A stretch of 64,000 bases of DNA, taken from NCBI GenBank assembly GCA_002269645.1, contig NIVC01000673.1, forward strand, positions 124,001-188,000. Direction: 5' to 3'. The translations under genes were made by a program, and so were the position numbers. Source of the stretch: Macrostomum lignano. Its lineage: Eukaryota. Below, in pieces: positions 9,281 to 64,000 of this stretch (its first letter is position 1; each line of letters starts with the position of its first letter). The notes beneath the pieces were generated by a model. The model saw nothing but the letters and a program-made list of their open reading frames with translations, did not search any database and was not told the DNA's origin.

Positions 9281-9380
9281 TGAATCAGAATGCCACAGCA
9301 ACCCCCGACCCCCTGTTGCTGCCAAACCTCAGCCAGTCTCCATGGCAACAGCGTCATCCTAACCCCAACCGGCGCATCCG

Positions 9381-11878: not shown

Positions 11879-11937
<59 letters not shown>

Positions 11938-18360: not shown

Positions 18361-18491
18361 GGGTTTATTTGGTTCAGGGGTCTCTGAGTCGCCATCCAAC
18401 CAACCAAAACTCAGCATCCCAGCCCATCAATCAATTTCATGGTTGCCCCAGCGCCGCAGCCATTGCAGCGGCATCCCAGCAGACGGCAGCG

Positions 18492-18603
18492 ATGAACCTG
18501 CGGCTGCTTCTAGCGAGAACTCCGTGTCCCGGCTGCTATTATTCCCGGTTCGCCATCAGAGTTGGCTCAGCGGCTGCTGCAGTGCTCTGCCTCTTGTTTA
18601 TCG
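18492..18603 (+). other. Upstream duplicate of the hexosaminidase first coding exon (signal/anchor peptide)
   Basis: MNLRLLLARTPCPGCYYSRFAIRVGSAAAAVLCLLFI followed by G|GTGAG donor; the same peptide is encoded at 24723-24834. Confidence 0.65.
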
Positions 18604-18649
18604 GTGAGAAGCTGTGCTGCATCTGTCTGGCTCATGCAGATCCATAAAG

Positions 18650-21600: not shown

Positions 21601-22555
21601 GTACTACAATAGGCCCTGTTGTATCTATACTGCATATTGCAGTCAGCTGTGTGTACTGCAATAGGCCCCTGTTGTATCTATACTGCATATTGCAGTCTGC
21701 TGTGTGTACTGCAATAGGCCCCTGTTGTATCTATACTGCATATTGCAGTCAGCTCTGTGTGTACTACAATAGGCCCCTGTTGTATCAATACTGCATATTG
21801 CAGTCAGCTCTGTGTGTACTACAATAGGCCCCTGTTGTATCTATACTGCATATTGCAGTCAGCTCTGTGTGTACTGCAATAGGCCCCTGTTGTATCTATA
21901 CTGCATATTGCAGTCAGCTCTGTGTGTACTGCAATAGTCCCCTGTTGTATCAATACTGCATATTGCAGTCAGCTGTGTGTACTACAATAGGCCCCTGTTG
22001 TATCTATACTGCATATTGCAGTCAGCTCTGTGTGTACTACAATAGGCCCTGTTGTATCTATACTGCATATTGCAGTCAGCTGTGTGTACTGCAATGGGCC
22101 CCTGTTGTATCTATACTGCATATTGCAGTCAGCTGTGTGTACTACAATAGGCCCCTGTTGTATCTATACTGCATATTGCAGTCAGCTGTGTGTACTGCAA
22201 TAGGCTCCTGTTGTATCTATACTGCATATTGCAGTCAGCTGTGTGTACTACAATGGGCCCTGTTGTATCTATACTGCATATTGCAGTCAGCTGTGTGTAC
22301 TACAATGGGCCCCTGTTGTATCTATACTGCATATTGCAGTCAGCTGTGTGTACTACAATAGGCCCTGTTGTATCTATACTGCATATTGCAGTCAGCTGTG
22401 TGTACTGCAATAGGCCCCTGTTGTATCTATACTGCATATTGCAGTCTGCTGTGTGTACTGCAATAGGCCCCTGTTGTATCTATACTGCATATTGCAGTCA
22501 GCTCTGTGTGTACTACAATAGGCCCCTGTTGTATCAATACTGCATATTGCAGTCA
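18650..22555. repeat. 53-bp satellite array, ~3.9 kb
   Basis: Unit TGTTGTATCTATACTGCATATTGCAGTCAGCTGTGTGTACTACAATAGGCCCC. Confidence 0.97.
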
Positions 22556-41223: not shown

Positions 41224-44200
41224 ATGGCTGAGGACGCCGAGCTGCAGGCAGCCACCGAGCTGACATGCAGCGGCTGGGACGTCAACGCGACCGACTCTGA
41301 CGGCTGCTCGGCCCTGCACAACGCAGTGCAGCTCGGGAACTGTCGGGCTGCCGAGCGCCTCATCCAAGCAGCTGCTGACGTCGACCTGCAGACAAGCGCC
41401 GGCTCCAGCCCACTGCACATGGCGGTTCAGCGAGACCATCTCCAGCTGGCGGAGCTGCTGCTGAGGTCGCAGGCCGATCCCAACCTGCTGGCTGGAGACG
41501 GCCAGACGGCCATTCAGATGGCCATCCGAGCTGGCAACGACGACCTGCTGCGGCTGCTGCTGGCGGCCGGTGCTGACGCGAACTGGCCGACCGGTGAGCC
41601 GCCGCTGCTCACCGCCATCTGTCTGGGACGGGCTGAGGCCGGGAGGCTGCTGGTCTCGGCCGGTGCCGACGCGAGCGTCCGAGCCCGGACAGTGTCCGAG
41701 GCCACTGCGCAGGCGCTTCAAGCTGGAGATGCGGAGAAGCTGAAGCAGAGTTTGCCGATGCCTGCGATTCTCGCTGCAGCGAGCCTGGGACAGCGGGAGA
41801 TTCTGGTCCACCTGCTGGCATCTGGAGCTGACTGCGACACGAGAGACGGGAAGGGGGCGACCGTTTTGCACCATGCGGCACGCAAGGACAAGGAGATGCT
41901 GGCGATCGCCTTGTCCCTTCAGCAGGAGATCGGCTGTCTGAGTGACGAAGGCTCATCTGCTCTCCACTTTGCTGAATCTGAAGAATCAGTAAGTCAGCTT
42001 CTTTTGCTAGGAGCAGACATTGACAGGAGAAACGTCTTCGGCAATTCGCCACTTTTTGTGGCTGCCAGCAATGGTTGCCGAAATGTGGTGGCCAAGCTGA
42101 TCGACTGTGGAGCAAATATCGATCTGCAGAACAATGATGGCGTCCCACCACTGGCCGCTGCATCTAACAAAGGGCATTTGCAATTAGTGGCCAAGCTGAT
42201 CGACTGTGGAGCAAGCATCGATCTGCAGCAAAATGAAGTCGCGTCACCATTGCTCCTTGCATCCTTTCAAGGTCACGTGCAAGTAGTGGCCAAGCTGATC
42301 GACTGTGGAGCAAGCATCGATCTGCAGAACAATGAAGGCGTGTCACCACTGTACATTGCCGCAGAGATTGGTCACTTGCAAGTTGTGGCCAAGCTGATTG
42401 ACTGTGGAGCAAGCATCGATCTGCAGAACAAGAATGGCGGGTCACCACTGAACAGTGCCGCATTGGCCGGCCACTTGCAAGTTGTGGCCAAGCTGATCGA
42501 CTGTGGAGCAAGCATCGATCTGCAGAACAATGATGGCTGGTCACCACTGTGCATTGCTGCATTGAAAGGCCACTTGGAAGTAGTGGCCAAGCTGATTGAC
42601 TGTGAAGCAAGCATCGATCTGCAGAACAATAATGGCGTAACACCGCTGTACATTGCTGCATTCAAAGGCCACTTGCAAGTTGTGGCCAAGCTTATTGACT
42701 GTGGAGCAATCACCGATCTACAGGACAATCATGGCGTAACACCGCTTTGCATTGCTGCAGTGAATGGCCACTTGCAAGTAGTGGCCAAGCTGATTGACTG
42801 TGGAGCAAGCATCGATCTGCAGAACAAGACTGGCGTAACACCGCTGTGCATTGCTGCAGTGAATGGCCACTTGCAAGTAGTGGCCAAGCTGATCGACTGT
42901 GGAGCAAGCACCGATCTACAGGACAATCATGGCGTAACACCGCTGTGCATTGCTGCAGTGAATGGCCACTTGCAAGTAGTGGCCAAGCTGATTGACTGTG
43001 GAGCAAGCATCGATCTGCAGAACAAGACTGGCGTAACACCGCTGTACATTGCCGCACAGATTGGTCACTTGGAATTAGTGGCTAAGCTGATCGATTGTGG
43101 AGCAAGCATTGATCTGCAGAACAATGATGGCGTGTCACCACTGTACATTGCCGCAGAGATTGGTCACTTGCCAGTAGTGGCCAAGCTGATCGACTGTGGA
43201 GCAAGCATCGATCTGCAGAGCAATAATGGCATGTCACCACTGTACGTTGCCGCACAGAATGGCCACTTGGAAGTAGTGGCCAAGCTGATCGACTGTGGAG
43301 CAAGCATCGATCTGCAGAGCAATAATGGCATGTCACCACTGTACATTGCCGCACAGAATGGCCACTTGGAAGTAGTGGCCAAGCTGATCGACTGTGGAGC
43401 AAGCATCTATCTGCAGAAAGTGAGTGGCGCGTCTCCACTGTACATTGCCGCACAGAATGGCCACTTGCATGTTGTGGCCAAGCTGATCGACTGCAGAGCA
43501 AATATCGATCCGCAAAGCAAGAATGACTGGTCACCACTGAACAGCGCCGCATTCAATGGTCACTTGCAAGTTGTGGCCAAGCTGATCGACTGTGGAGCAA
43601 GCATCGATCTGCAGAACAAGTATGGCTGGTCACCACTGAACAGTGCCGCATCAAATGGCCACTTGCAAGTTGTGGCCAAGCTGATGGACTGTGGAGCAAG
43701 CATCGATCTGCAGAACAAGTATGGCTGGTCACCACTGAACAGTGCCGCATTCAATGGCCACTTGCAAGTTGTGGCCAAGCTGATCGACTGTGGAGCAAGC
43801 ATCGATCTGCAGAACAAGTATGGATGGTCACCACTGAACAGTGCCGCATTCAATGGCCACTTGCAAGTTGTGGCCAAGCTGATCGACTGTGGAGCAAGCA
43901 TCGATCTGCAGAACAATAAAGGCTGGTCACCACTGTACAGTGCCGTAGTAAGAGGCCACTTGCAAGTTGTGGCCAAGCTGATCGACTGTGAAGCAAGCAT
44001 CGATCTGCAGAACAATAATGGCAACTCACCACTTAATGCGGCGGCCCAGAAGGGATATTTTGATGTTGCCAATAAGCTTATTTGCTGTGGAGCAAATACG
44101 CATTTGCAGGATAATTTTGGATTCGCACCACTACACAATGCGGTGCAAGAAGGACACTTGAAAGTGGTGACAATTCTAGTTAAAAGTGGTGGAGGCATCG

Positions 44201-44723
44201 GTCTGGAAATTGACATTTCTGGCGAGTTCATGCCCCAGTCAAAGAAAAATTTGTGTTTTCCTGATGCTTCAACTCAAGCAGCTCTCTCGGTGAACACTCC
44301 AGTGCACCTCGCCGCGGAATTCGACCATCCTGATGTTCTCCAATGTCTGATTAATAATTATGAGAACGTGAATAAACTAAGTCGTGTGACCCCACTGCAT
44401 GTTTCTTGCCTGTGCAATCTTGCTTATATTGCGAAGCAGCTGTTGCGTTCCAGAGCTGATGCAGAACTCCGTGATGAATACGGCTTAACAGCGGCAGACA
44501 TTGCTGCAATTCGTGGCTCACCGGAGCTTTATTCGGTATTTTGCGACTTATCAAATGATGAAAAACCGTCTGAACCTGTATCATTGCTGAATGTGGCTTC
44601 TCAGCAGTTACTGACGCACATTCACCTGGTTTGCTGCTTTGGAAATGCAGAGTTCGTGCAAGGCCTCTGCAGCAAAATGGTCGGAATTCGCGATCCAATT
44701 CGCGTGCCTGTTTTGGACTTCAA
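41224..44723 (+). CDS. Exon 1 of the ANK-cGLR gene: ankyrin repeat region (~30 repeats, 21 near-identical)
   Basis: 33-aa GxSPLxxAAxxGHLxVVAKLIDCGASIDLQxxx units. The apparent ORF stop at 44725-44727 lies inside a GTAAGT donor. Confidence 0.93.
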
Positions 44724-44752
44724 GTAAGTTTAGTAACCTACTCCAAACTTAG

Positions 44753-44821
<69 letters not shown>

Positions 44822-47800
44822 TTAGATTGATAGATTGATAAATAAATAAATTCAGTCAGTCAACTTCATTCCCACAGCGAGTCCGAGTTCTCAAAGCGGC
44901 TCCACAAGTCCCTCAGCAGCTCAGGATTCACCCGCATCAACGCGGCTGTTCAGAGCGGCACTGCGGCTGCCTTGGAGCAGATTCTGAGACAGAGTCTGGG
45001 CAGCCAATGCTTTTTGGTCGGCAGCTTCGCCGATGGCTGGGGCAACTGCCTCACAGGAATCTGCGGTCAGACTGATGCGGACTCCGACATGGATGTCACT
45101 GAGTTTGAGACGGGATTGCAGCTGCACATTGCGGGAAGTGGAGTACACGACGAAATAGAGAGAAAATTAACGTGCAAAGAAGTCGAGTTCAGTGACGGTC
45201 ACATCAAGCACCAAATAGACTGTGAGTTCTAGTCTGACTTCGGAAAATGTGCAACAGTAATCATTCGTACAAACCATGTGACAATCTTTAGTAGTGCTGA
45301 CTAGCAATCTTTGCCCCCCGATGGGGGACATCTGGATAGAATCTCTGTTCTCTACAAGTAACAAAAAGACAGCCAAAAAAAGCCTTCACAAAGACAACAG
45401 ACAAACTGCTAGAATGAAGTGCAATGCAAAAAAATCATACCCAGACCGCAAGCATTCCCCGGATAGCAAGCATCCCCCAGATAGCAAGCATCCCCCAAAT
45501 AGCAAGCATCCCCCAGATATCAAGCATCCCCCAAATAGCAAGCATCCCCCAGATAGCAAGCATCCCCTAGATAGCAAGCATCCCCCAGATAGCAAGCATC
45601 CCCCAAATAGCAGGTATCCCTCAGATAGCAAGCATCCCCTAGATAGCAAGCATCACCCAGATAGCAAGCATCCCCCAGATAGAAGCACCCCCAGATAGCA
45701 AGCATCCCTCAGATACTTAGATAGCAAGCATCCCCCAGATAGCAAGCATCCCCTACCAGATACCTACCAGACAAATCTACCAGACAATAAGTAGCTAGTG
45801 CAACAATTTCCTTAGCTTTATGGTGGCTCCTCTAAAATTGGCATGACGCTTACTTTTACATTTGAAATTGTGTATCTTTAATGTTTGATATGGAGTTATG
45901 TATATGTTTGACATGGTGGCTCTTTAATGTTTGAGATGGTTGGCTCTTTAATGTTTGACATTGTGGCTCTTTTATGTTTGACTTGGTGGCTCTTTAATGT
46001 TCCACATGGTGCTCTTTTATGTTTGGCAAGGTGGCTCTTTAATGTTTGACATGATGGCTCTTTAATGTTTGGTATGGAGTCACGTATATGTTTGACATGG
46101 TGGCTCTTTTATGTTTGACATGTTGGCTCTTTTATGCTTGACAAGGTAGCTCTTTAATGTTCGACATGGTGGCTCTATAATGTTTGACATGGAGTCACGT
46201 ATATGTTTGACATGGAGTCATGTATATGTTTGACATGGTGTCTCTTTTATGTTTGACATGTTGGCTCTTTTATGCTTGACATGGTAGCTCTTTAATGTTC
46301 GACATGGTGGCTCTTAAATGTTCGAAATTTTGATTTTTAGTATATTGGATTTCATTTTTAGTATATTGGATATTTTTTCTGAAATCTATCTCACACATAC
46401 ACACAGACAACTCATTTTTAGTATATTGGACTAGCCAATCCCAACCCCCGTTGGGGCTTTCCGTCCAAACTCCAACCACAGTTTTCACCATCCACAAAAT
46501 CCCCGATGCAAAGAATCTCACATGCAAAGAATCCCCCATCCAAAGAACCCCCATCGATAGAATCACCGATCCGAATAATTCCCCATTCAATGAATCCCCT
46601 ACTCAAGAAATCCCCGATCTACAGAAGCCCCCTATCTAAAGAATCCCCATCCAAAGAATCCCTCATCCACAGAATCCCCATCCAAAGAATCCCTCATCCA
46701 CAGAATCCAAATATAAAGAATCCTCCATCCATCCCTATCCAAAGAATTTCCTCATTCATTCCTATCCAAAGAATTTCCTCATTCATTCCTACCTAAAGAA
46801 TCCCCCATCCATCCATATCCAAAGAATCACCCCCAATGAATCCGCGTCCAAATAATTCACATCATAATCCCCATCTAAATAAACCATAGATCTCCCATAT
46901 AAATAATCCATAGATCTCCGATCTAAGAAATCCGCCATCAAAGAAATAATTGGCCAAAGAATTCCCTCATCTAAAGAACCCCGTCCGAATAATACCCATC
47001 CAACGAATCCAAAGAATCTCTCATCCAAATAATCCCCCTATTAATAGAATTCTTGGCCAAAGAATCCTTTCATCTAAAGAACCCCTGTCCAAAAAACCCC
47101 CCCATCTAACGAATCCTTCATCTAAAGAATCAACCATTCGAAAAACCCTCCATCGAAACAATGCCCCATCAAAGGAATTCCCTAATGAATCACCTATCCA
47201 AAGATATTCATTAGAAGCATCCCTCATCCAAAGAATCATCAATCCATAGAATTCCCCCAAAACTTAACATCTCAGCAATTCCCCGAGCCTCGACACCTCA
47301 TAAAATTCCCCCAAGCCTCGACATCTTACCAATTTCTCCCCGTCCAAAGCCTTGACATCTTACCAATTTCTCCCCGTCCAAAGCCTTGACATCTTACCAA
47401 TTTCTCCCCGTCCAAAGCCTTGACATCTACCAATTTCTCCCCGTCCAAAGCCTTGACATCTTACCAATTTCTCCCCGTCCGAAGCCTTGCCATTTCAGCA
47501 GTTCCCCGTTAAGCCTTGAAATCTCAGCAATTCTCCCCCACAAGTCTTGCATCTCAGCAAGTCCCTCTTAAGCCTTGCATCTCAGCAAGTCCCTCTTAAG
47601 CCTTCACATCTCATTAATTCCAATAGGTAAGATTTTATACATGCATTTCAATAATTCCCCCTGTAAATCTTGACATCTTAGAATTCTCTTCCGAGCAAGC
47701 ATCCCCTGATAGAAAGTACCCCCACCAAGATTAGTGAAACAATTTCCTCAGCTAGCCAATTCCAACCCCCGTTGGGGCTATTCGTCCAAACTCCAACCAC

Positions 47801-50800
47801 AGTTTTTCCACGCAATACTCGTAAAATTTCACCCAACTGAATCTCAAATTTAAAGAATCCCCCATCCAAAGAATCCACCACCCATAGAATCCACGATACA
47901 AAGAATCTCACATGCAGAGAATCCCCATCCAAAGAACCCCCATCGATAGAATCCCGATCCGAAGAATTCCCCTTCCAATGAATCCCCTATCGAGAATCCC
48001 CTATCCAAAGAATCCCCCATCCATCCCTATCCAAAGAATCCCCCCATCCATCCCTATCCAAAGAACCCCCCTTCCATCCCTATCCAAAGAACCCCCCATC
48101 CATCCCTATCCAAAGAATCCCCCATCCATCCCTATCCAAAGAATCCCCCATCCATCCCTATCCAAAGAATCCCCCATCCATCCCTATCCAAAGAATCTCC
48201 CCATCCATCCCTATCCAAAGAATCTCCCCATCCATCCCTATCCAAAGAACCCCCCTTCCATCCCTATCCAAAGAATCCCCCATCCATCCCTATCCAAAGA
48301 ATCCCCATCCATCCCTATCCAAAGAATCCCCCATCCATCCCTATCCAAAGAACCCCCCATCCATCCCTATCCAAAGAATCCCCCATCCATCCCTATCCAA
48401 AGAATCCCCCATCCATCCCTATCCAAATAATCCCCCATCCATCCCTATCCAAAGAATCCCCCCATCCATCCCTATCCAAAGAATCTCCCCATCCATCCCT
48501 ATCCAAAGAACCCCCCTTCCATCCCTATCCAAAGAATCCCCCATCCATCCCTATCCAAAGAATCTCCCCATCCATCCCTATCCAAAGAATCCCCCATCCA
48601 TTCCTATCCAAAGAATCCCCCCATCCATCCCTATCCAAAAAAATCCCCCATCCATCCCTATCCAAAGAATCCCCCATCCATCCCTATCCAAATAATCCCC
48701 CATCCATTCCTATCCAAAGAATCCCCCCATCCATCCCTATCCAAAAAAATCCCCCATCCATCCCTATCCAAAGAATCCCCCCATCCACAGAATCACGATC
48801 AAAATAATGCAAATATTCACTCATCCAAATAAACCTCCATCAAAAGAATCTGAAGAATCTGAAGAATCTGAATCTGAGTCCCCTCATCTGAAGAACCCCG
48901 TCCAAATAATCCAAAGAATCATACTCCAAATAATCTCCATCTAAAGAATGCAAAGATTCTCCCATCTAAATAATCCCCCATCATAAAAATCCTAGGCCAA
49001 AGAATCCTTCATCTAAAGAATCCCCCATTCAAAGAACCCTCCATCGAAAGAATCCCCCATCGATGGAATTTCCCAATGAATCACCTATCTAAAGATATCC
49101 ATTAGAAGCAGCCCTCATGGAAGGAATCCCCAATCCACAGAATTCCCCCCCAAGACTTGACATCTCAACAATTCCCCCCAAGCCTTGACACCTCAGTTCA
49201 TTCTCTCTTAAGCTTTGACATCTCAGCAGTCCTCCAAGTAAGCCTTTATATCTCAGTGATTCCCCCAGTAAGCCTTGACATCTCAGCAGTCCTCCAAGTA
49301 AGCCTTTATATCTCAGTGATTCCCCCACTAAGTCTTAACATCTCAGTGATTCCCCCAAGCCTTGATATTTTAGAAATTCCCCCCACGCCAGCAGTTCCCC
49401 CATTAAGCCTTTATATCTCAGAAATTCCCCCCAAGCCTTAACATCTCAGCAATCCCCCCACCAAGCCTTGGCGTCTCAGAAAGTCCCTCTTTAGCCTTGA
49501 GAGCGAATTGCTGAGATGTCAAAGCTTAAGAGAGAATGAACTGAGGTGTCAAGGCTCAGTGATTTCCTCAGTAGGTCTTCACAACTTAGCAATTTCTCCC
49601 CGTCCAAGGGCCTGACATCTCAGAAATTCCCCCACGCCTTGAAACCTCAGCAATTTCCTTTTGGCATCTCAGCAAGTCCCTTTAAGGCTTGACATCTCAG
49701 TAATTCCCCAGTAAGCCTGCATATCTGAATAATTCCCCAGTATGTCTTGACATCTTAGCGATCTCACCCGATCAAGCATACCCTAAGAGCAAGTGTCCTT
49801 TCGATAGCAAGCATCCCCTGATAGAAAGTAACCCAAGCAAGACAGTGAAACAATTTACTCAGCTAGTACAATAATTAGTTTCTTATCTAGTGCAAAAATC
49901 CTTTTCAAAATTCAAAGTTTAATAAAAAATTTTGAATATACTACATGAACGCTCGTAGCTTCTTCTTTTTTACCTGATTTACTGGACGTTTTTTTAAGTT
50001 AAAATTTTTAATAAAAAAACTTTTACTCTCTAAAAATTCGAACCCAAGTCGCTGCATTAGCAGTTCAGTCTGTTCACCTCTAGGCTAACTCATCGTTTTG
50101 ATAACATGAATTGTAGCACTTGTATAATTCAACACTGAAAACTCCAAGCATAGAGTAGAAATCACTCGAAGCAAGTTATGACATAATCAATTTCTCAGGC
50201 AGGCAATATCAGTTTCAATTATTAAAGTGAACAATATGGTTACGCAATCTAAATTTAAATACAATGGCGCTGGCTTGAATTGCGGAGTTGCGATAAAGTG
50301 GGGATTTGCGATATGGAAGAGCGTACAATGAGTATATAAAGTAAAAAGTATAAAAATCTTCTTTTTAATGCTGTGCTCTTAATTTTTCGAATCTCAGAAA
50401 ACAAATTATATTCCCGAACTCAGCGTACCTAGCTCTTTCCAGCAATACAAGGTTCTCTTCTGAAAGTGAAAAACTCGAAGCGCAAACAACGATTGAACAT
50501 TCCTGCTCTAAAGCATTGAAATTAAAAAGGTGTACATTCAGCGCCAGCTACAGTGAGAGGCTTTCAAGTTGATGCATTGAAATTAACAACCAAGCAATGC
50601 TCAGGACTAATTGAATGGCGAAACCCTCCCCCCAATTTCAATAACTTAAAGGTGTTGCGCAACCTTTCAACGCTTGTAGCTTTCCACGCGAGTGTAGAGA
50701 ACCAATGCTATAGTTGGCACTGAGTTATGATGCAATACAATTCCATCGGCAGTCAGAACGCTTCTTAATCGGAAAAAAAACTGTTTGAACTTAAAAAAAC

Positions 50801-52742
50801 AAGCAAAAATCGAGTTTTTCGAATATTTAATCCCTAAAAAATGAAGCAATTTCTTAGCAAAATTATGTGTACCAGCGCACCATCAATACGCATCGAATGC
50901 AGAAAACCCCACGAAATTCGGACCACGCAAAGTCAAGTTAAACGAAGGTTCCTATAGGTAGGTAGGTACATAGTTTTGATTTTTAGTATATTGGGGATGT
51001 GTACCAGCGCACCATCAATACGCATCGAATGCAGAAAACCCCACGAAATTCGGACCACGCAAAGTCAAGTTAAACGAAGGTTCCTATAGGTAGGTAGGTA
51101 CATAGTTTTGATTTTTAGTATATTGGATTTAATAGTAGTTGCATGCCACTCCCATCCAACTCATTCAACTGCAGCCTCCAAGCCGAACGTCGCCACCTCT
51201 GGCATGACTTTGAGGCCTTCAGTCGACATTGTGGGCGCCATTCCCTGCTGCTTTTATCCTGAATTCGAAATTTTCCGACCCGGCTACAAGTCGTGCATTC
51301 CCGAGGACATTTTATCGGCCATTCGATCTGACACCCAGTGCCACGCGGTCGCGGCAGCTCCTCCAGGTCTCGAGGGCCAGTGCATGCGATTTAGCACTAC
51401 ACTCTTGGAGAGGGCGCTCATGCACAGTCTCACTACACTTCAAGGTCAGCTCTTCGTCCTGCTCAAGTACATCATCAAGAGAGTGATTGCGAAGCGAGTC
51501 AAGGGTCTGAAGACCTACCACGCAAAGAACTTGCTCCTCTACATGCTGGACAGGACACCGGCTGACGAGTGGCGACCGCACAATCTGATCAAGCTGGTGA
51601 GACAGTCGCTGAAGCTGCTGCTCGACTCTCTCACTGACTCAAAAAGCAGTGAGCAGCAGTGCATGCAGCACTTCTTCATGAGAGACGCCGCCATCTACTT
51701 GCGCAAGGACCACGAGGGAAAGACGAAGATCAAAGAAGTTGTGAGTCAAGTGATGGATGAGCTGCCGCATCTGATGTTGGAGTTTGAGCAGACATTGATG
51801 AAGAACTCACCGAGTGTGATCGAATTTCACCCGTTTCTCATTATGCCGTTGGTTAATGAGCTCAGAATTCCTGAATCAGACACCGAGTTCGAGTATCACC
51901 AGATCTATGACGCAGTGAAGAGAGCTTTAGAGATGCTGAGCAAAGAGATTTCGAGCAGTGATGAAGCGAGTCACGTGCAGCAGCTCGGCTCGCTGCTCAA
52001 TCGGATTCCAGACTGCGCCAGAACTGCCAGAGAGAGTCTGAGAGCTCTGATGGGGCTCAGAGAGGGAAAACCGATAGACTCAGTTGTTGATGCTGTGAGC
52101 TCCACCGATGTGAGCAACGGAATCGCCTGTCCGCAAAGTGAGGCTGATTCCATGTTCCACTTTGGCGGTGAAGAAAGCAGTCAAAAATACCTCACAGCGA
52201 GGCGTGACTTCGTGTGGAAGAGTCTGCTGGAGTCGGACTCAGCATGGAAGTTCATGTTCGATCCCGACCGAAAGCTGAATTTCCCATTCCTGCCCGACCG
52301 CATGAGCCACATTAAACTGGCATTCCCATGGCGGGTGCCCTACAGGAGCTGTGACTGTGTCTTCATCAACTTTCACGCTCTGTACAAGGCGCTCCAACTC
52401 GAGGCGAGGAAGCTGAGCGGAGATGATGGAGTCAACACGTTGCTAGGAGACTTTGGTTCCACCAGACTGGACACTCAGGAGCTGCTGATGATGCTGCATT
52501 ACTGCAGTGATGAGGCGAAGCTGGTTGAGATCATTCACAACAACAGACAGATGATTGTGGACACTGGACTGGCTGGGCCCGTGCTGAGCTTCCTGAATGA
52601 GAGGGTGAGTTCTCGCGATTTTGTCCTGCTTGACTTTCTCGAATGTCGTCTTGCGCTGAGAAGCCGATGTGAAAATCGAAATTGCAGCCGGCACTGCGCC
52701 AGCGATGCGTTCGAGCGACTTGGGCGAAGGTGGAGGAGCTGA
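41224..52742 (+). CDS. Ankyrin-repeat / Mab-21 (cGAS-like receptor, cGLR) nucleotidyltransferase fusion, ~1803 aa, 3 coding exons
   Basis: Exon 41224-44723 ends AA|GTAAGT (phase 2). Exon 44878-45221 starts CCCACAG|C and ends T|GTGAGT (phase 1). Exon 51175-52742 starts ACTGCAG|CC. Total 5412 nt, one frame. NTase motifs: FLVGS...DADSDMD and SVDIVGAI. Mab-21 motifs: MRFSTTLLERALM, LLKYIIK, LKTYHAKNLLLYML, W.P.NL. The 3' end may instead use the donor at 52605. Confidence 0.85.
44752..44822. repeat. (GATA)n microsatellite in ANK-cGLR intron 1
   Basis: Seen directly. Confidence 0.95.
44878..45221 (+). CDS. Exon 2 of the ANK-cGLR gene: NTase GS...DxD catalytic segment
   Basis: ESEFSKRLHKSL...CFLVGSFADGWGNCLTGICGQTDADSDMDVTEF; splice phases match both neighbours. 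Confidence 0.82.
45440..49870. repeat. Composite minisatellite region in ANK-cGLR intron 2 (18-bp, ~23-bp and ~27-bp units; two diverged larger units 46431-47751 and 47752-49861)
   Basis: Units GATAGCAAGCATCCCCCA, TTTAATGTTTGACATGGTGGCTC and ATCCATCCCTATCCAAAGAATCCCC. CTAGCCAAT(C/T)CCAACCCCCGTTGGGGCT recurs at 46431 and 47752. Confidence 0.8.
50865..51126. repeat. 132-bp direct tandem duplication just upstream of the exon 3 acceptor
   Basis: ATGTGTACCAGCGCACC...TTTTTAGTATATTGG at 50865 and 50997. Confidence 0.9.
51175..52742 (+). CDS. Exon 3 of the ANK-cGLR gene: third acidic residue, Mab-21 C-lobe and helical extension
   Basis: SVDIVGAIPCCFYP, HAVAAAPPG, CMRFSTTLLERALM, KGLKTYHAKNLLLYML. 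Confidence 0.85.
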
Positions 52743-52842
52743 GCAGCCAGAGAGAGCTCTCATCGGCCGAGGAGCGGCTGCGGGTGGAGCTGAGGATGTG
52801 GAGAGCGAGGCATTTCCTGTGGGAGAAGGAGGGGATTGACTC

Positions 52843-53115
52843 TGATGATTGACAGGTGAGTGACTGAGGCTGGTGATTGACAGGTGAGTGACTGAGGCCG
52901 ATGATTAACAGGTGAGTGACTGAGGCTTATGATTGACAGGTGAGTGACTGAGGCTGATAATTGACAGGTGAGTGACCGAGGCTGATGATTGACAGGTGAG
53001 TGATTGAGGCTGATGATTGACAGGTGAGTGACTGAGGCTGATGACTGACAGGTGAGTGACTGAGGCTGATGACTGACAGGTGAGTGACTGAGGCTGATGA
53101 TTGACAGGTGAGTGA
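52843..53115. repeat. 28-bp minisatellite in which every unit contains CAG|GTGAGT
   Basis: Unit GATGATTGACAGGTGAGTGACTGAGGCT, about 9-10 copies, followed by the acceptor TTTTCCATTGCAG at 53154. Confidence 0.9.
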
Positions 53116-53989
53116 ATGAAGCAAATTTTTCAGCCTCCCCATTTTCCATTGCAGGCCCAGCCACACCGCAGCTCAAGGATGTCCGGCTTTGCAGAATTTT
53201 TATCGACTTTTGTGCACCGCGTCTTTTGCCCGTTTTGCCCAGCTGACTGACCCAGCTGACTGACCCCGCAGAGGAACTGCAGTGCAGCTTTGAGCCTCAG
53301 TGGAGCAGCTGCAGTGCTGCTAAGTTGAAATGCAGTGCAAAATGCAGTGTGCCATGGCTCAGCGATAAGATTCTGTGAGCCTCATCACTTGCTGGAGATG
53401 TCATTCCGCCTCCATGTCTGTCTTGTGAAGGCAGATCCCAAATCCCAGAAGCAGTCAGTTGAAACCCCAGCTTCAGTGCTGACGCTCCTCATGCCTTCTG
53501 CAATGCTGGCTCAGCAAGCTCTGACTTTATTTCGGTCAGTTCTGCTTTTGCTGACTTGATTTTCCTGTCAGTTGCTTCCCTGCTGCAAATGGCTGCTTTT
53601 TTTGAGCTGTGCTCAAAGTCTTCCTGTTTTCTCATGTGCCTCCGTTTTTAACTGCATTGTTTTACTTGTTGCAGTGTTTGTTTAAATGTCCATTTCAAAT
53701 TTGTTAAAATGCTGTGTCAGGCTCAGCCACTCCCATTGCTACTCAAAGTAGAGCAGCTGATTCTGTGCTGCCAATGACAGCTGCTCACGCGATCCCCATT
53801 TTACTGATTTCCCTTGGAGCCTCAGAGCTGCTCTGACCTGAGTCTCTGGTGGCTCAGGCATCTCCCTGACCTCAGGCCACGGCTGTCAGCATTTCATTGT
53901 TTAATGCTGAGCAGCTTGGGACTCAGGCTGGGTTCTCCCCAGATCCTCAGGGCTGGTGCAATCCACAGGGGTCCTCGTGATTCTTCCCA

Positions 53990-55559: not shown

Positions 55560-57110
<1,551 letters not shown>

Positions 57111-57149
57111 CAGCAGACAGCTAAGCCAGTTGCCCCCCCCCTTTCCCAG

Positions 57150-58238
57150 GTGAACCCCGGCTTCCTCAACATCGACGTCCGCCTATTCGTAGACATCATT
57201 CGCGGCGCCGCCGACCTCTACCTGGCGCTGTCGGACCGCACATTCGTGGTGAACAACACCGTAGACGCCAATGGCTTCTGGTCCAATCTGGTCAGCATCG
57301 ATTATCAAGCGGCGGCAATGTTGCCAAGGCAACCAGACGGTCGAAGGCGCCGTCGCAGCGTCGTCAGCGACCCGCCGGTCCTGTCGGATCGAGTCCTGGA
57401 AGTGAGCGCCAACCCCTACCTGACGTACGTGAGCCTGCCGGTGTCGGGCAGCATCCTGATTGTGAGAAATGCCACCAGGCGCGTCCTCATCACCATTCCG
57501 TGCCAGAGCTACGAGTTCTCGCTGAACAAATTCTACCTGGTAGTGCAGGGAGTCTCCACAGACGTCAACGTGTCGGGCATTGTGTTCTTCCGTCAGGACC
57601 AGAACCACATCAACCTGCTGGTGTTCTTCTCCATGTTCTTCTCCTGCTTCTTCCTCCTGTTCGGCCTGGTTGTGCTGGCTTGGAAGGCTCGCCAGGCGCA
57701 CAGCCGGCGGGTTGCTAGGCAACGCAGGGAACGCGAGCGACAGTCAATGGCGGCAAGGCCGTTCGGTAGGGTGAGACTGATTCTACCGTGTGCCACTACT
57801 GACAGTAGCCATGCGGGGCTGGTGAACCCGGTGTGCCTGGAGCCGCTGGTGACCGGAGCTGCTGGCAAAGCTGGCCAGGCCGCGGCCCTGTGCACTGTGC
57901 TCATCCAGCTGCCCCATCCCCAGCCTGGCGGCTCCTTCTGCCTCGGATCGGCGCTCGTGTTGACCCGCGGTCTGGCGCCGTTTTTGCACGGCAGAGCGGC
58001 GCCGCCTCATCAGCAAACTCATCAGCAGCCTCATCATCAGCCTCATCAGCAGCCTCAGCAGCCTCACCAGCGGCCCGGCCTCCCGCGGGTTGTCATCGCC
58101 GACAATGCGGAAGCTGCCGAGGCCGCCGCCAACGCCGAGATTGTTGTTGAAGATGGCGAGCGCGACGAGGCTGTCGAGCTTGCGACACCAAGCGGCGATG
58201 TCCATCGAAGGACTGGACAGGCCACATCTAATTGTTGA
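57150..58238 (+). pseudogene. MEGF8: Orphan duplicate of the MEGF8 last exon (TM + cytoplasmic tail); no upstream MEGF8 exons in this copy
   Basis: Near-identical to 6306-7355, with a 39-nt longer in-frame His/Gln/Pro stretch. Acceptor TTTCCCAG|GTG is intact. Sequence upstream of the microsatellite is unrelated to 5697-6067. Confidence 0.8.
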
Positions 58239-60728
58239 GAAAATTGAGCTCGAGATGTGCTTTTTAGGGACCTTGGAGATATCATTTTGACTTTACAAAT
58301 TCCTAATCTAAAATCCTATCTCTGATCCCATCATCACGAACCCGAATCCCATCATCCCGATCCCAAAGCCCATTATCCCGATCCCAAATCCCATCATCCC
58401 GATCCCAAATCCCATCATATCGATCCCAAGTCCCATCATCCCGATCCCAAATCCCATCATCCCGATCCCAAATGCCATCATCCCGATCCCAAATCCCATC
58501 ATCATCCCGATCCCAAATGCCATCATCCCGATCCCAAATCCCATCATATCGATCCCAAATCTCATCATCCCGATCCCAAATCCCATCATATCGATCCCAA
58601 ATGCCATCATCCCGATCCCAAATCCCATCATATCGATCCCAAATCTCATCATCCCGATCCCAAATCCCATCATATCGATCCCAAATGCCATCATCCCGAT
58701 CCCAAATCCCATCATATCGATCCCAAATCTCATCATCCCGATCCCAAATCCCATCATCCCAATCCCAAATCCCATCATCCCGATCCCAAATCCCATCAGT
58801 CAGGCTTCAATTATCAAAAGCAAGGCTTTATTTTTACTCAATTGCTCACCCAGTCAAGTCACATTTGCAAAGCAATAAGCCGCTGTAAAAGCAGTCATAT
58901 TTTTGAATTTGCCAATTTTGTTAAAGTCTTGTCCTGTCTTTGCTACAAATCGCTTCGCTCGCTCTGCCGCCCGCCCACGCACCGCAATTTCAAATTTCAA
59001 CTCAAATTCTAAGCAAACAAAATTCCTCACTTGATGGCCCAAATGTTTTGTTTTGATTGACTTTTGTTTATCCTGTGCACCTGCTTGTCTTTCAAATTTC
59101 AAACTCACAATTGAAAGTTGATCTCACGCTATATTTTGATTTGTTATTTGGGGCAAATTCTGCTGTGGCATATCAGCGTGGCGTCTTCTGCTTTTTGCTT
59201 TCCTGTGTTCTGTCTGAACTGAATCCGCCTGACTGCCTGCTTTCCTGTGTTTTGTCTGAACTGAATCCGCCTGACTGCCTGCTTTCCTGTGTTTTGTCTG
59301 AACTGAATCCGCCTGACTGCCTGCTTTCCCGTGTTTTGTCTGAACTGAATCCGCCTGACTGCCTGCTTTCCTGTGTTTTGTCTGAACTGAATCCGCCTGA
59401 CTGCCTGCTTTCCTGTGTTTTGTCTGAACTGAATCCGCCTGACTGCCTGCTTTCCTGATCACAAAGCCAGAACTTATAAAATTGCAAAGCAAAACTTGTT
59501 ATCTCACGATTCAAATATTGCTGCACCGATAATGTCAGACGATTTTTAAACGGGGTTTCAAAAGAGATTATTGATACTCGTAATTAGGCTGACAAATATT
59601 CTGCAGATCTGAATGGCACAAGCCTGTAAAATCATGTAAAATATGTTAATAAATTTATTACTTTTTATTCTTTTTGTTGCTGATTATAACATTTCTGGCT
59701 GTGTTGAGGTTTTTGTTTAAGATATTTGTGTTGTTCCAGATCCTTCAGGAATAGTTCAGAATGGTTCCAGATCCTTCAGGAATAGTTCACAATGGTTCCA
59801 GATCCTTCAGGAACAGTTCACAATGGTTCCACATCCTTCAGGAACAGTTCACAATGGTTCTAGATCCTTCAGGAACAATTCACAATGGTTCCAGATCCTT
59901 CAGGAACAATTCACAATGGTTCCAGATCCTTCAGGAACAGTTCACAATGGTTCCAGATCCTTCAGGAATAGTTCACAATGGTTCCAGATCCTTCAGGAAT
60001 AGTTCACAATGGTTCCAGATCCTTCAGGAACAATTCACAATGGTTCCAGATCCTTCAGGAACAGTTCACAATGGTTCCAGATCCTTCAGGAACAATTCAC
60101 AATGGTTCCAGATCCTTCAGGAACAATTCACAATGGTTCCAGATCCTTCAGGAACAATTCACAATGGTTCCAGATCCTTCAGGAACAGTTCACAATGGTT
60201 CCAGATCCTTCAGGAACAATTCACAATGGTTCCAGATCCTTCAGGAACAATTCACAATGGTTCCAGATCCTTCAGGAACAGTTCACAATGGTTCCAGATC
60301 CTTCAGGAATAGTTCACAATGGTTCCAGATCCTTCAGGAATAGTTCACAATGGTTCCAGATCCTTCAGGAACAGTTCACAATGGTTCCAGATCCTTCAGG
60401 AACAGTTCACAATGGTTCCAGATCCTTCAGGAATAGTTCACAATGGTTCCAGATCCTTCAGGAACAGTTCACAATGGTTCCAGATGCTTCAGGAACAGTT
60501 AGAATGGTTCCACATCCTTTAGGAAAAGTTCACAATGGTTCCAGATCCTTCAGGAATAGTTCACAATGGTTCCAGATCCTTCAGGAATAGTTCACAATGG
60601 TTCCAGATCCTTCAGGAATACTTCAGAATGAATCAGAATGCCACAGCAACCCCCGACCCCCTGTTGCAGCCAAACCTCAGCCAGTCTCCATGGCAACAGC
60701 GTCATCCTAACCCCAACCGGCGCATCCA

Positions 60729-62672
60729 ATGAACTTCTCCGAGCTCATCCCTTTCTCAGGCGGCAGTCGCCTGGCCAGCTTCTCCCCAAGCGGATTTTAC
60801 CTGGCCGAGGCGGCCCAATTTCGGGCGAACGTGCGCGACAGCAAATCCTTGGAGCTGCTGCAGTCCTTCGCCTGCGCCGATCAGATCACGGATTTGGCCT
60901 GGTCGCCTGACAGCTTGTTTCTGATGTGCGTCATGCGCAAGAGGGCGCTGGTGCAGGTGAGGGACTTTATTCGATACATATCGGCTGTTTGTTTCAAACT
61001 AATTCACAAAGTTGTTTTCGATACATATCGGCTGCTTCTTTAAAACTAATTCATTGTTTGTTTCGATGCATATCGGCTATTTGTTTCAAACTAATTCACA
61101 AATTTGTTTTCGATACATATCGGCTGCTTCTTTAAAACTAATTCATTGTTTGTTTTCGATACATATCGGCTAATAGCTGCACTATAATGCAGATCTTTTA
61201 CGGTTACCCAACCTTCACCGCTCGCCTTCCCAGGTGTGGTCCCTTGAGCACCCGGACTGGGCTTGCAAAATTGACGAAGGCGTCGCCGGTTTGGTCGCCG
61301 CCTGCTGGGCGCCGGACAGTCGGCGAGTGCTGACCACGGCCGACTTTAATCTGCGGGTGACTGTCTGGTCGCTGACTGACAAGACGGTGGCTTATTTGAA
61401 GCACCCGAAGGCCTGCTCGAAGTATATAGCGTTCAGGTGAGCTCTGGAAAAAATGGCACTCGGGTCCTAAAAATGGCACTCTGGTTCTAAAAATGGCACT
61501 CGGGTCCTAAAAATGGCACTCTGGTTCTAAAAATGGCACTCGGGTCCTAAAAATGGCACTCGGGCCCTAAAAATGGCACTCTGGTTCTAAAAATGGCACT
61601 CGGGTCCTAAAAATGGCACTCTGGTTCTAAAAATGGCACTCGGGTCCTAAAAATGGCACTCTGGTTCTAAAAATGGCACTCTGGTTCTAAAAATGGCACT
61701 CGGGTCCTAAAAATGGCACTCGGGCCCTAAAAATGGCACTCTGGTTCTAAAAATGGCACTCGGGTCCTAAAAATGGCACTCGGGCCCTAAAAATGGCACT
61801 CTGGTTCTAAAAATGGCACTCGGGTCCTAAAAATAGCACTCGGGCCCTACAAATGGCACTCTGGTTCTAAAAATGGCACTCGGGTTCTAAAAATGGCACT
61901 CGAGCCCTAAAAATGGCACTCTGGTTCTAAAAATGGCACTCGGGTCCTAAAAATGGCACTCGGGCCCTAAAAATGGCACTCTGGTTCTAAAAATGGCACT
62001 CGGGTCCTAAAAATGGCACTCGGGTCCTAAAAATGGCACTCGGGCCCTAAAAATGGCACTCTGGTTCTAAAAATGGCACTCGGGGCCTAAAATAACACCC
62101 GGGTTTCTACTAAAAACTGGATTGCTGATTTCAGAAGTGGCATCAATGATTTCAGAAATGGCATCACTGATTTCAGAAATGGCATCACTGATTTCAGAAG
62201 TGGCATCACTGATTTCAGAAATGGCATCTCGGATTTCATTCCGCCTTCCCCATCCCCAAATCCCCTCAGCTCGGACGGCTGCCTGCTGGCCCTGGCCGAG
62301 CGTCGCGGCCTCAAAGACTGCGTCTCCGTGTTCAACTGCGGCGGTGACACCGGCTGGCAGCTGGTCGCCCATTTCGATGCCGGCACCGAAGACCTGGACG
62401 GCCTGGCCTGGTCGCCTGACGCCACTGCTCTGGCCTGCTGGGACGGCTGCCTGCGCAGTCGGGTGGCGATTTTCTCGCCGACAGGTTCGCGATTGTTATG
62501 GTGATGTTGATGATGATGATGATGATGGTGATGTTGATGATGATGATGATGATGATGATTGTGATGATGATGATTGTGATGATGATGATGATGATGATTA
62601 TGGTGATGATGATGATGATGATGATGATGATGGTGATGAAGATGATGATGACGATTGTGATGATGATGATGG

Positions 62673-62707
<35 letters not shown>

Positions 62708-62708
62708 G

Positions 62709-62746
<38 letters not shown>

Positions 62747-62750
62747 ATGG

Positions 62751-62782
<32 letters not shown>

Positions 62783-62819
62783 GTGATGAAGATGATGATG
62801 ACGATTGTGATGACGATTG

Positions 62820-62851
<32 letters not shown>

Positions 62852-62855
62852 ATGG

Positions 62856-62890
<35 letters not shown>

Positions 62891-62939
62891 GTGATGATGA
62901 TGATTGTGATGATGATGATGATGATGATGATGATTATGG

Positions 62940-62980
<41 letters not shown>

Positions 62981-63062
62981 GTGATGAAGATGATGATGAC
63001 GATTGTGATGACGATTGTGATGATGATGATGATGATGATGATGATTGTGATGATGATGATTG

Positions 63063-63100
<38 letters not shown>

Positions 63101-63176
63101 ATGGTGATGATGATGATGATGATGGTGATGAAGATGATGATGACGATTGTGATGACGATTGTGATGATGATGATGG

Positions 63177-63208
<32 letters not shown>

Positions 63209-63224
63209 GTGATGATGATGATTG

Positions 63225-63262
<38 letters not shown>

Positions 63263-63266
63263 ATGG

Positions 63267-63307
<41 letters not shown>

Positions 63308-63423
63308 GTGATGAAGATGATGATGACGATTGTGATGATGATTGTGATGATGATGATGATGATGGTGATGGTGATGATGATGATGGTGATATGGTGATGA
63401 TGATGATTGTGATGTTGATGATA

Positions 63424-63455
<32 letters not shown>

Positions 63456-64000
63456 GATGATGATTGTGATGATGATGATTGTGATGATGATGATAATGAT
63501 GATGATAACGGTGGTGGTGTTAATAGTGATGATAATGATGGTGATGATGATTGTGATGATGATGATGGTGATAATGGTGATGGTGATGATGGTGATGGTG
63601 ATGATGATGGTGATGGTAATGTTGCTGGTGATGGTGATGATAGTGATGATGCTGATGATGATAGTTTCCATACTTATCCTCAAATTCATCCCATCCCCGA
63701 ACTCACCCCACGCAGGCACACAGCTGCACACATTCAGCGCTTACCCCCTGGAGCGCGGCCTGGGCACCAAGTGCGTGGAGTGGTCGCCATCCTCCCAGTT
63801 CCTGGCAGTCGGCTGCTACGACGGCTCGCTGCGGCTGTTGAACAACATCACCTGGGAGCCGCTGGCCGAGATGCGCGGCCAGACCTGTGTGGAGCCGCCG
63901 CCATCCTCCTCAGCCTCATCATCGGGGATCGTCGCTTATCGAGAGATCGAATCCCCATCCGGTTTGCCCAGATACGAGGCTTCATCACCCGGTGACCCTC
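60729..64000 (+). CDS. WRAP73: WRAP73 second copy, runs off the window end
   Basis: Exons 60729-60956, 61234-61436, 62270-62484, 63716->64000, with intact splice sites and frame. The differences from copy 1 that I could see are synonymous. Confidence 0.92.
62498..63660. repeat. (GAT)n-type microsatellite in intron 3 of WRAP73 copy 2
   Basis: Seen directly; longer than in copy 1. Confidence 0.95.

What the first reader, a model, noticed from the sequence alone, without database searches (positions are those of the whole stretch)
41224..52742. Hidden ankyrin-array / cGAS-like receptor (cGLR) fusion: candidate variable-sensor nucleotide second-messenger immune gene
Seen: three separately listed ORFs join through canonical, phase-matched splice sites (44723/44878 and 45221/51175) into one 5412-nt frame. 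It encodes ~30 ankyrin repeats, then an NTase core with GS, DxD (DMD, 45086-45094) and a third Asp (VDIV, 51225), then Mab-21 C-lobe motifs (RFSTTLLE, KTYHAK) and a ~300-aa helical extension. Established: cGAS/cGLRs make cyclic dinucleotides using this acidic triad; some invertebrate cGLRs carry extra repeat domains; earlier surveys, as I recall, reported cGAS/STING missing from sampled flatworms. Inference: a probably active cGLR in which the ankyrin array senses a protein or pathogen ligand, as sensor repeats do in NLRs. If the host is a flatworm, the downstream receptor may not be STING. No effector gene is visible in the window.
Basis: partly seen in the sequence, partly recalled or inferred. 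Interest (0 to 1): 0.88.

Follow-up and report, generated by a model that had tools for sequence, protein, structure and literature searches.

The report
Flatworm ankyrin–cGAS-like receptor gene
This is a real four-exon gene of the flatworm Macrostomum lignano (or a very close relative) that joins about 28 ankyrin repeats to a cGAS-like enzyme with intact catalytic residues. It is an unannotated member of a large family that a 2023 survey already listed as ankyrin–cGLR fusions, so it is a useful candidate rather than a new kind of system.

Summary
The two splice joins are real, and both introns run GT..AG and keep the frame. The corrected CDS is 41224-44723, 44878-45221, 51175-52604 and 52688-52852, giving 1812 aa.

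The nearest proteins are all from Macrostomum lignano. Paralogue gene models join ANK repeats to the same enzyme, with introns at homologous places.

The enzyme part is cGAS-like. All 50 top Foldseek PDB hits are cGAS or cGLRs (prob 1.0). hhalign against cGAS/cGLRs gives 99.1% probability. G1215-S1216, D1237/D1239 and D1299 align with human cGAS GS, E225/D227 and D319.

The family is not new. Li et al. 2023 listed M. lignano ANK-cGLR fusions and cloned five paralogues, 28-40% identical to this one. None is flagged among their 15 active enzymes.

The new points are modest:
- The full-length locus is unannotated.
- The family is very large, with at least 80 clusters at 50% identity.
- The enzyme core is not basic (pI 6.5), unlike nucleic-acid sensors.
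- A conserved C-terminal domain of about 320 aa has no match among solved structures.

Enzyme activity, the ligand and the downstream receptor remain untested.

The parts
41224..44723 (+). Exon 1: start codon, about 28 ankyrin repeats and a non-repeat linker (residues 1-1166, plus two bases of codon 1167)
   Evidence: The ORF starts at the first ATG after an in-frame TAA at 41143. Pfam Ank gives 28 stretches, E 2e-164.
42031..44109 (+). Regular array of 21 ankyrin units of 99 bp (33 aa), in register, inside exon 1
   Evidence: TRF reports a 99-bp period, 19.7 copies and 87% matches over 42088-44033. KL[IM][DC]C anchors lie exactly 33 aa apart, 21 times. Between units, framework codons give dN/dS 0.25 (dS 0.33), DARPin-randomised positions 0.83, and the most variable positions (1, 2, 3, 5, 9, 10, 13, 14) 1.15.
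44724..44877 (+). Intron 1 (154 nt, GT..AG), holding a (GATA)24 microsatellite
44878..45221 (+). Exon 2: N-lobe of the nucleotidyltransferase, with G1215-S1216 (45020-45025) and D1237-M-D1239 (45086-45094)
   Evidence: P0001 and P0002 begin here at 95% and 90% identity. hhalign puts GS on cGAS GS and DMD on cGAS E225-F-D227. In the model, GS follows strand 44-47 and DMD opens strand 70-76.
45222..51174 (+). Intron 2 (5953 nt, GT..AG), almost entirely minisatellite arrays
   Evidence: P0001 and P0002 read straight across the join (HQID|SSKPN). The only long open stretches inside are repeat-encoded low-complexity sequence.
51175..52604 (+). Exon 3: third catalytic Asp D1299 (51225-51227), the Mab-21 C-lobe (Pfam PF20266 hit at about 51453-51698) and most of the C-terminal extension (from about 51800)
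   Evidence: Pfam Mab-21_C scores 30.9 bits against a cut-off of 24.1. hhalign puts VDI on cGAS SVD319I, RFSTT on WRLSFS and KTYHAK on SSYHVK. Invariant family residues are listed.
52605..52687 (+).
   Evidence: There is an intron at exactly the homologous place in paralogue P0038.
52688..52852 (+). Exon 4: last 54 residues (two long helices) and the stop TGA at 52850-52852
   Evidence: 52688-52837 is 100% identical to the last 50 aa of P0001. The last four residues and the stop are read from the window only.

Best explanation
This is an intact four-exon gene for an 1812-aa protein of the Macrostomum lignano ANK-cGLR family.

Shown here:
- An N-terminal solenoid of about 28 ankyrin repeats is joined to a cGAS-like nucleotidyltransferase whose GS motif, acidic triad and nucleotide-contact residues are all in place.
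- A family-specific domain of about 320 aa follows, with no solved structural relative.

Inferred:
- The protein rests inactive.
- A ligand, more likely a protein or other non-nucleic-acid molecule than dsDNA or dsRNA, binds the concave face of the ankyrin array.
- This binding frees or orders the catalytic site, which then makes a nucleotide second messenger.
- That messenger is read by a receptor not yet identified in this animal.
- The C-terminal domain may serve in oligomerisation, regulation or partner recruitment.
For: Gene model: canonical, phase-matched splice sites. P0001 and P0002 start at exon 2 and cross the later joins. Paralogue P0038 joins ANK to the enzyme with introns at homologous places. 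Long ANK-enzyme paralogues of up to 3379 aa exist.

Enzyme: the AF2 model of the 91%-identical P0002 has pLDDT 87.5 and pTM 0.87. The Foldseek PDB top 50 are all cGAS, Cv-cGLR1 or Sp-cGLR1, with prob 1.0 and about 370 aligned columns. hhalign against cGAS/cGLRs gives prob 99.1 and E 5e-19, and aligns the GS motif, the triad, the R/S of WRLSFS and the Y/K of SYHVK. These residues are invariant or nearly so across the aligned paralogues (17 and 40 rows).

Selection: codons outside the variable positions give dN/dS 0.25 between repeats at dS 0.33, and variation is concentrated at the canonical binding-surface positions.

Ligand type: the enzyme core has pI 6.5 and the whole protein 5.45. Li et al. 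report pI above 8.5 for dsDNA- and dsRNA-sensing cGLRs.

Family: the enzyme part is 28-40% identical (E 1e-46 to 1e-83) to the five M. lignano proteins that Li et al. classed and cloned as cGLRs.
Against: - I examined no transcript or read data.
- No enzyme activity is known for any family member. The five paralogues cloned by Li et al. carry no 'active' note in Table S3, and the 15 active enzymes are described as coming from insects, anemones, molluscs, hydras and corals.
- Pfam's Mab-21 NTase model PF03281 does not hit, even at E<=1.
- The concentration of variation at surface positions is typical of any ankyrin protein, and part of it was chosen after seeing the data.
- Core pI ranges from 5.4 to 9.2 among paralogues.
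- I did not test whether this genome has STING.
Confidence: 0.6

Rival explanations
1. The enzyme is active, but the protein is not a pathogen sensor. On this reading the ankyrin array is a scaffold or localisation module, as in ankyrins or ANKRD proteins, and the product serves an endogenous regulatory role.
For: Ankyrin arrays most often mediate constitutive protein-protein contacts. No infection or expression data were available. There is no immune effector or receptor gene among the ten longest ORFs outside the finding.
Against: At least 80 clusters at 50% identity in one species, with ANK arrays of very different lengths, is the pattern of immune receptor families rather than housekeeping genes. 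The closest structural relatives are innate immune sensors.
Confidence: 0.17
2. It is a silent or decaying duplicate. On this reading the gene is one of many copies in a duplicated, repeat-rich genome and is not expressed or not functional.
For: The gene lies inside a tandem segmental duplication of at least 50 kb. Intron 2 is 6 kb of minisatellite, against about 1 kb in P0038. Public models of its closest relatives are only 5'-partial, and no annotated protein covers its ANK half.
Against: The frame is open for 5439 nt across four exons with all splice sites canonical. The catalytic and family-invariant residues are all present. Framework codons of the repeats show purifying selection, with dN/dS 0.25.
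Confidence: 0.1
3. It is two genes: an ankyrin-only gene ending at TAA 44725-44727 and a separate Mab-21 gene starting in exon 2.
For: The ANK ORF does end in a stop just after the donor site. P0001 and P0002 are modelled without ANK.
Against: P0001 and P0002 have no start Met and begin exactly at the acceptor, which marks them as truncated models. The first in-frame start codon that the ORF listing finds in exon 2 is a TTG at 44972, only 16 codons before the GS motif, so a protein started there would lack the N-terminal helices of the fold. Many paralogue models join ANK to the enzyme, and P0038 has an intron at the homologous place.
Confidence: 0.05
4. It is a nucleic-acid sensor like cGAS or Drosophila cGLR1, with the ANK array only an accessory.
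For: All known ligands of animal cGLRs are dsDNA or dsRNA. Some paralogue cores are basic, with pI 8.7-9.2.
Against: This protein's core has pI 6.5 and the whole protein has a net charge of about -53. Five paralogues screened with poly I:C and dsDNA carry no 'active' note in Li et al. Table S3.
Confidence: 0.08

Closest known systems
Macrostomum lignano ANK-cGLR proteins listed and cloned by Li et al. 2023 (PAA86972.1, PAA45980.1, PAA57558.1, PAA93208.1, PAA68676.1; PMC9980059, Tables S2 and S3)
   Same: The same family: 28-40% identity over about 375-420 aa, E 1e-46 to 1e-83. They share the motifs GS[FY]x[DE]xWG, SD[IM]D, R[FV]ST, GLKTYH and HFF. They have N-terminal Ank_2 domains and the same C-terminal extension.
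   Different: This copy has a much longer and more regular ankyrin array (28 repeats, 21 of them near-consensus 33-mers).
Vertebrate cGAS and the structurally solved invertebrate cGLRs (Cv-cGLR1, PDB 8gjw; Sp-cGLR1, PDB 8gjy)
   Same: The same bilobal fold (Foldseek prob 1.0, TM 0.5-0.59 on the target). The GS motif, the acidic triad and the nucleotide-contact residues align.
   Different: Identity is only 12-16%. There is no zinc-thumb-like basic DNA platform visible in the sequence. The core is near-neutral rather than basic. About 1170 aa of ankyrin repeats are added in front and about 320 aa of unknown fold behind. Pfam PF03281 does not score.
[quoted passage not shown] 2023, Fig. 4C)
   Same: The same design idea: a cGLR core with an appended protein-interaction module.
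   Different: They come from another phylum and were not compared by sequence here. No death-fold or other known domain was found in the C-terminal extension of the flatworm protein.
NLR, STAND and other repeat-sensor immune receptors (LRR, ANK, TPR or WD40 sensor plus a signalling module)
   Same: They work alike in outline: a long, variable repeat array joined to a signalling enzyme, in a large species-specific expansion.
   Different: The protein has no NACHT or NB-ARC ATPase, and signalling would be by a nucleotidyltransferase. This is an analogy only, not membership.

Membership tests
cGAS-like receptors (Mab-21-type CD-NTases) | Bilobal cGAS/Mab-21 fold | tested here: met
   The AF2 model of P0002 (91% identical in the MAFFT alignment of the corrected C-part) has pLDDT 87.5. 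The Foldseek PDB top 50 are all cGAS or cGLR, E 1e-7 to 6e-6, prob 1.0.
cGAS-like receptors (Mab-21-type CD-NTases) | h[G]S motif plus the [DE]h[DE] and h[DE]h catalytic triad, at the positions of human cGAS G212/S213, E225/D227 and D319 | tested here: met
   hhalign of the family against a cGAS/cGLR alignment gives prob 99.1. G1215/S1216, D1237/D1239 and D1299 fall on those columns. These residues are nearly invariant in 40 aligned family members.
cGAS-like receptors (Mab-21-type CD-NTases) | The three acidic residues converge to bind two metal ions | not testable with these tools
   Model coordinates are not exposed. I can only say that the residues lie on neighbouring strands of the model (strands 70-76 and 130-139).
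cGAS-like receptors (Mab-21-type CD-NTases) | Pfam Mab-21 models | tested here: inconclusive
   PF20266 (Mab-21_C) scores 30.9 bits, above its cut-off of 24.1. PF03281 (the NTase part) gives no hit at E<=1.
cGAS-like receptors (Mab-21-type CD-NTases) | Ligand-dependent synthesis of a cyclic di- or oligonucleotide | not testable with these tools
   This needs biochemistry. Five paralogues were screened by Li et al., and none carries an 'active' note in Table S3.
cGAS-like receptors (Mab-21-type CD-NTases) | A cognate receptor (STING or another) in the same genome | not tested
   No flatworm genome or proteome can be searched here with a STING profile. Published surveys report no STING in Schistosoma or Schmidtea. 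No paper in the searched library holds both 'Macrostomum' and 'stimulator of interferon genes'.
Nucleic-acid-sensing cGLR subtype (cGAS, Dm-cGLR1, Cv-cGLR1, Sp-cGLR1) | Basic protein (pI above 8.5) with a long positive ligand groove | tested here: not met
   The core has pI 6.48 and the whole protein pI 5.45. The criterion comes from Li et al..
Mab21L1/2-type developmental proteins | The same fold, but no predicted functional active site | tested here: not met
   The active-site residues are intact and conserved, so it does not belong to this subgroup.
Ankyrin-repeat proteins | Tandem 33-residue ANK repeats | tested here: met
   Pfam Ank gives 28 stretches at E 2e-164, and Ank_2 gives E 5e-271. 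There are 21 units in exact 33-aa register.
Death-fold or other known signalling domain in the C-terminal extension | Recognisable domain by profile or by fold | tested here: not met
   There is no Pfam hit at E<=1 beyond Mab-21_C. The separate AF2 model (pLDDT 81, pTM 0.85) has a best Foldseek PDB E of 0.14 and prob 0.13.

The most novel reading that the evidence does not exclude
The Macrostomum ANK-cGLR family could be a lineage-specific, massively expanded set of receptors. Each would read a protein or other non-nucleic-acid ligand through its own ankyrin surface. It would signal through a nucleotide messenger to a receptor other than canonical STING. The conserved 320-aa C-terminal domain, which has no known fold relative, would act as a new regulatory or assembly module.
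Probability: 0.2. Interest if true: 0.75.

Novelty: new member of a known kind. Interest (0 to 1): 0.35.

Why it matters
Almost all animal cGLRs are orphans, because the only known ligands are dsDNA and dsRNA. A flatworm family combines intact catalytic sites, acidic or neutral cores and long, diverse ankyrin arrays. That makes it a practical place to look for a cGLR that reads a protein or another non-nucleic-acid ligand.

The family also bears on what reads the signal in a phylum where STING has been reported lost. M. lignano can be grown in the laboratory, which makes these questions testable there (own knowledge: it is also amenable to RNAi and transgenesis).

This particular locus adds three things: a corrected full-length gene model, the largest regular ankyrin array seen in the family here, and the observation that the conserved C-terminal domain has no known structural relative.

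Tried and rejected
I used P0002 instead.
- A profile search of the family against PDB sequences gave only weak hits, E about 0.2, though all the best ones were cGAS or cGLR1 C-lobes. Fold search and hhalign were needed.
- From the helix pattern I suspected a death-fold six-helix bundle in the C-terminal extension. Foldseek with a separate model found nothing, so I dropped the idea.
- I looked for a public full-length orthologue, or an ANK-only model of this locus, and found none.
- I looked for further coding exons in the 6-kb intron. It holds only repeat-encoded low-complexity frames.
- Rfam found nothing in the window.
- I began a six-frame Pfam scan of the whole window for a receptor or effector gene and abandoned it as too bulky. 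Only the ten longest ORFs outside the finding were scanned.
- I did not test for STING in this species. The word-based protein search would not reach a divergent flatworm STING, so a negative result would have meant nothing.


Full report
**Observation**

The window is eukaryotic DNA rich in micro- and minisatellites.

The two proposed joins are canonical: CAA|GTAAGT...cacag|C at 44723/44878 and CT|GTGAGT...tgcag|C at 45221/51175. Joined, they give an open 5412-nt frame. The motif coordinates are exact:
- DMD at 45086-45094;
- the third Asp at 51225-51227;
- RFSTTLLE and KTYHAK in exon 3.

The 3' end is wrong. The closest public protein, P0001 (Macrostomum lignano A0A1I8IHJ4), follows the window up to ...LNER. 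Its last 50 residues then match 52688-52837 at 100% in another frame. The sequence shows an 83-nt GT..AG intron at 52605-52687.

The corrected CDS is 41224-44723, 44878-45221, 51175-52604 and 52688-52852. That is 5439 nt, or 1812 aa. The last four residues and the stop rest on the window alone.

**Whose gene, and is the fusion real**

All close relatives are from M. lignano. In the MAFFT alignment of the corrected C-part they are 95% and 91% identical, and exon by exon they reach 90-100%. Both start, without a Met, exactly at the exon 2 acceptor and read straight across the exon 2/3 join. They are therefore 5'-truncated models, and they confirm that acceptor and the long intron.

Many paralogue models carry ANK repeats in front of the same enzyme part. 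Some reach 1756, 1915 and even 3379 aa.

I mapped the GenBank-annotated paralogue P0038 (1218 aa) onto its contig. Three of its introns lie at the homologous places: ANK to enzyme, inside the N-lobe before the third-Asp strand, and 54-65 residues from the end.

Exon 2 has no ATG start codon. The first in-frame start that the ORF listing finds is a TTG at 44972, only 16 codons before the GS motif, so a protein started there would lack the N-terminal helices of the fold. I take the fusion as established short of transcript data.

No public protein of 642-2042 aa carries the unique end of exon 1, and none of 997-3170 aa matches the whole protein closely. This locus is therefore unannotated at full length.

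**What the enzyme part is**

- Pfam sees Mab-21_C (PF20266) above its threshold, but not PF03281.
- An AlphaFold2 model of P0002, built with 39 family sequences, is confident (pLDDT 87.5, pTM 0.87).
- Foldseek against the PDB returns only cGAS and the invertebrate cGLRs Cv-cGLR1 and Sp-cGLR1 in the top 50. Probability is 1.0, with about 370 aligned columns and a target-normalised TM of 0.5-0.59.
- I built a cGAS/cGLR alignment from sequences in Table S3 of Li et al. 2023. Compared profile to profile with the family, it gives probability 99.1% and E 5e-19.

In that comparison the residues line up as follows:

| This protein | Human cGAS |
|---|---|
| G1215-S1216 | GS of NTGSYYE |
| D1237-M-D1239 | E225-F-D227 |
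| V-D1299-I | SVD319I |
| R/S of RFSTT | R/S of WRLSFS |
| Y/K of KTYHAK | Y/K of SSYHVK |

These residues are invariant or nearly so across the aligned paralogues (17 rows, 40 rows). In the model, GS sits between the first strand and a short helix, DMD opens the next strand, and the third Asp lies on a neighbouring strand. I could not measure distances, because the coordinates are not exposed.

**The ankyrin part**

Pfam counts 28 repeats. Twenty-one of them form a 99-bp tandem array in exact register.

The units are not recent copies. Mean pairwise DNA identity is 80%, and synonymous divergence at framework codons is 0.33. Framework codons are under purifying selection, with dN/dS 0.25.

Amino-acid variation sits at positions 1, 2, 3, 5, 9, 10, 13 and 14 of the repeat. 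These overlap the positions randomised in designed ankyrin binders. The set fixed beforehand (2, 3, 5, 13, 14, 33) gives dN/dS 0.83, and the set chosen after seeing the data gives 1.15. This fits a working binding surface, but it is also what most ankyrin proteins show.

**The C-terminal part**

Residues about 1491-1812 are conserved across the family. A separate model is confident (pLDDT 81, pTM 0.85) but has no PDB fold match; the best hit has E 0.14 and probability 0.13. Pfam finds nothing there.

In the 1.84-billion-protein library, the sampled hits that cover only this part are M. lignano fragments or merged models, apart from one unnamed JGI metagenome protein and one unnamed MetaClust entry.

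**Family size and range**

A profile of the enzyme plus extension finds 666 representatives at E<=1e-3 and 80 at E<=1e-30. All seven sampled strong hits are M. lignano. The three weaker hits sampled (E 1e-13 to 1e-19) are two bivalve proteins and one unnamed entry. They match the Mab-21 core (roughly profile positions 50-370) but not the C-terminal extension.

**Literature**

- Wu et al. 2014 reported cGAS and STING lost in nematodes and in the flatworm Schistosoma.
- A 2026 study found neither in Schmidtea.
- Li et al. [quoted passage not shown]

Table S2 of Li et al. lists M. lignano PAA proteins with Ank_2 domains. Their Table S3 shows five of them cloned for the screen as numbers 89-93. 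The window protein is 28-40% identical to all five (E 1e-46 to 1e-83), and my hit P0019 is their number 91.

None of the five carries the 'active' note that marks the selected enzymes. The 15 active enzymes are described as coming from insects, anemones, molluscs, hydras and corals. The screen used poly I:C and a 45-bp dsDNA.

Li et al. also note that nucleic-acid-sensing cGLRs have pI above 8.5. Here the core has pI 6.5 and the whole protein 5.45, while paralogue cores range from 5.4 to 9.2.

**Mechanism**

Shown: one gene, an ANK array, an intact cGAS-like catalytic core and a conserved extra domain.

Inferred: ligand binding to the ANK surface switches on synthesis of a nucleotide messenger that is read by an unidentified receptor. 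I put this at about 0.6 for 'active signalling cGLR', and lower (about 0.4) for 'ANK is the sensor'.

The rivals, in order of weight, are:
- an active enzyme without an immune-sensing role;
- a silent duplicate;
- a nucleic-acid sensor;
- two separate genes.

**Verdict**

This is a correct and careful piece of reading that rediscovers a catalogued class. The locus is a new, unannotated member of a known kind. The residual interest lies in the size of the family, its non-basic cores, the very long regular ANK array and the C-terminal domain of unknown fold.

Noticed in passing
window 6080-12000 and 56916-63500: These two blocks are 94-97% identical in the parts outside internal repeats, in the same order, and offset by about 50.8 kb. 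The ANK-cGLR gene therefore lies inside a tandem segmental duplication of at least 50 kb, and a sister copy may lie just outside the window.
   Followed up: partly
window 45222-51174 (intron 2): Nearly the whole 6-kb intron is minisatellite, with periods of 16 to 138 bp, and is strongly C-rich on the + strand (GC skew -0.42 to -0.58). A perfect 132-bp x2 repeat at 50865-51126 ends about 50 bp before the exon 3 acceptor. The homologous intron in paralogue P0038 is only about 1 kb.
   Followed up: partly
window 52842-53119: A 28-bp minisatellite (9.9 copies, 93% matches) begins at the last codons and the stop of the gene. Each unit contains CAG|GTGAGT, a donor-like site, so the exact C-terminus and possible alternative 3' splicing are uncertain.
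   Followed up: no
window 16300-27130: There are very long tandem arrays, with self-matches stepping by about 53 bp at 94-97% identity and a second array with a step of about 31 bp near 17150-18360 and 23380-24590. A 4.6-kb block at 16328-20925 is repeated at 22553-27131.
   Followed up: no
window 3260-4009, 12028-13227, 14822-15853: Neighbouring ORFs carry an EGF-like segment just below the Pfam cut-off, a WD40 repeat and a RING-variant domain. None of the ten longest ORFs outside the finding has a STING, TIR, death or other immune-signalling domain.
   Followed up: partly
P0001 versus window 51400-51440: Public model P0001 lacks six residues (LTTLQG) in a helix where Q-G-Q is nearly invariant in the family. 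This looks like a mis-called splice or a damaged copy rather than a normal variant.
   Followed up: no
P0020 and P0029 (JGI metagenome contigs of about 1.7 kb): Two family members, 41-43% identical, come from metagenome contigs rather than from the M. lignano genome. This suggests related flatworm DNA in environmental samples.
   Followed up: no
window 44753-44848 (intron 1): A (GATA)24 microsatellite fills most of the 154-nt first intron.
   Followed up: no
P0043, P0130, P0152 (M. lignano paralogues): Some family models are very long (1915-3379 aa), and one carries an extra PF13671 hit. They may be multi-domain variants or merged gene models.
   Followed up: no
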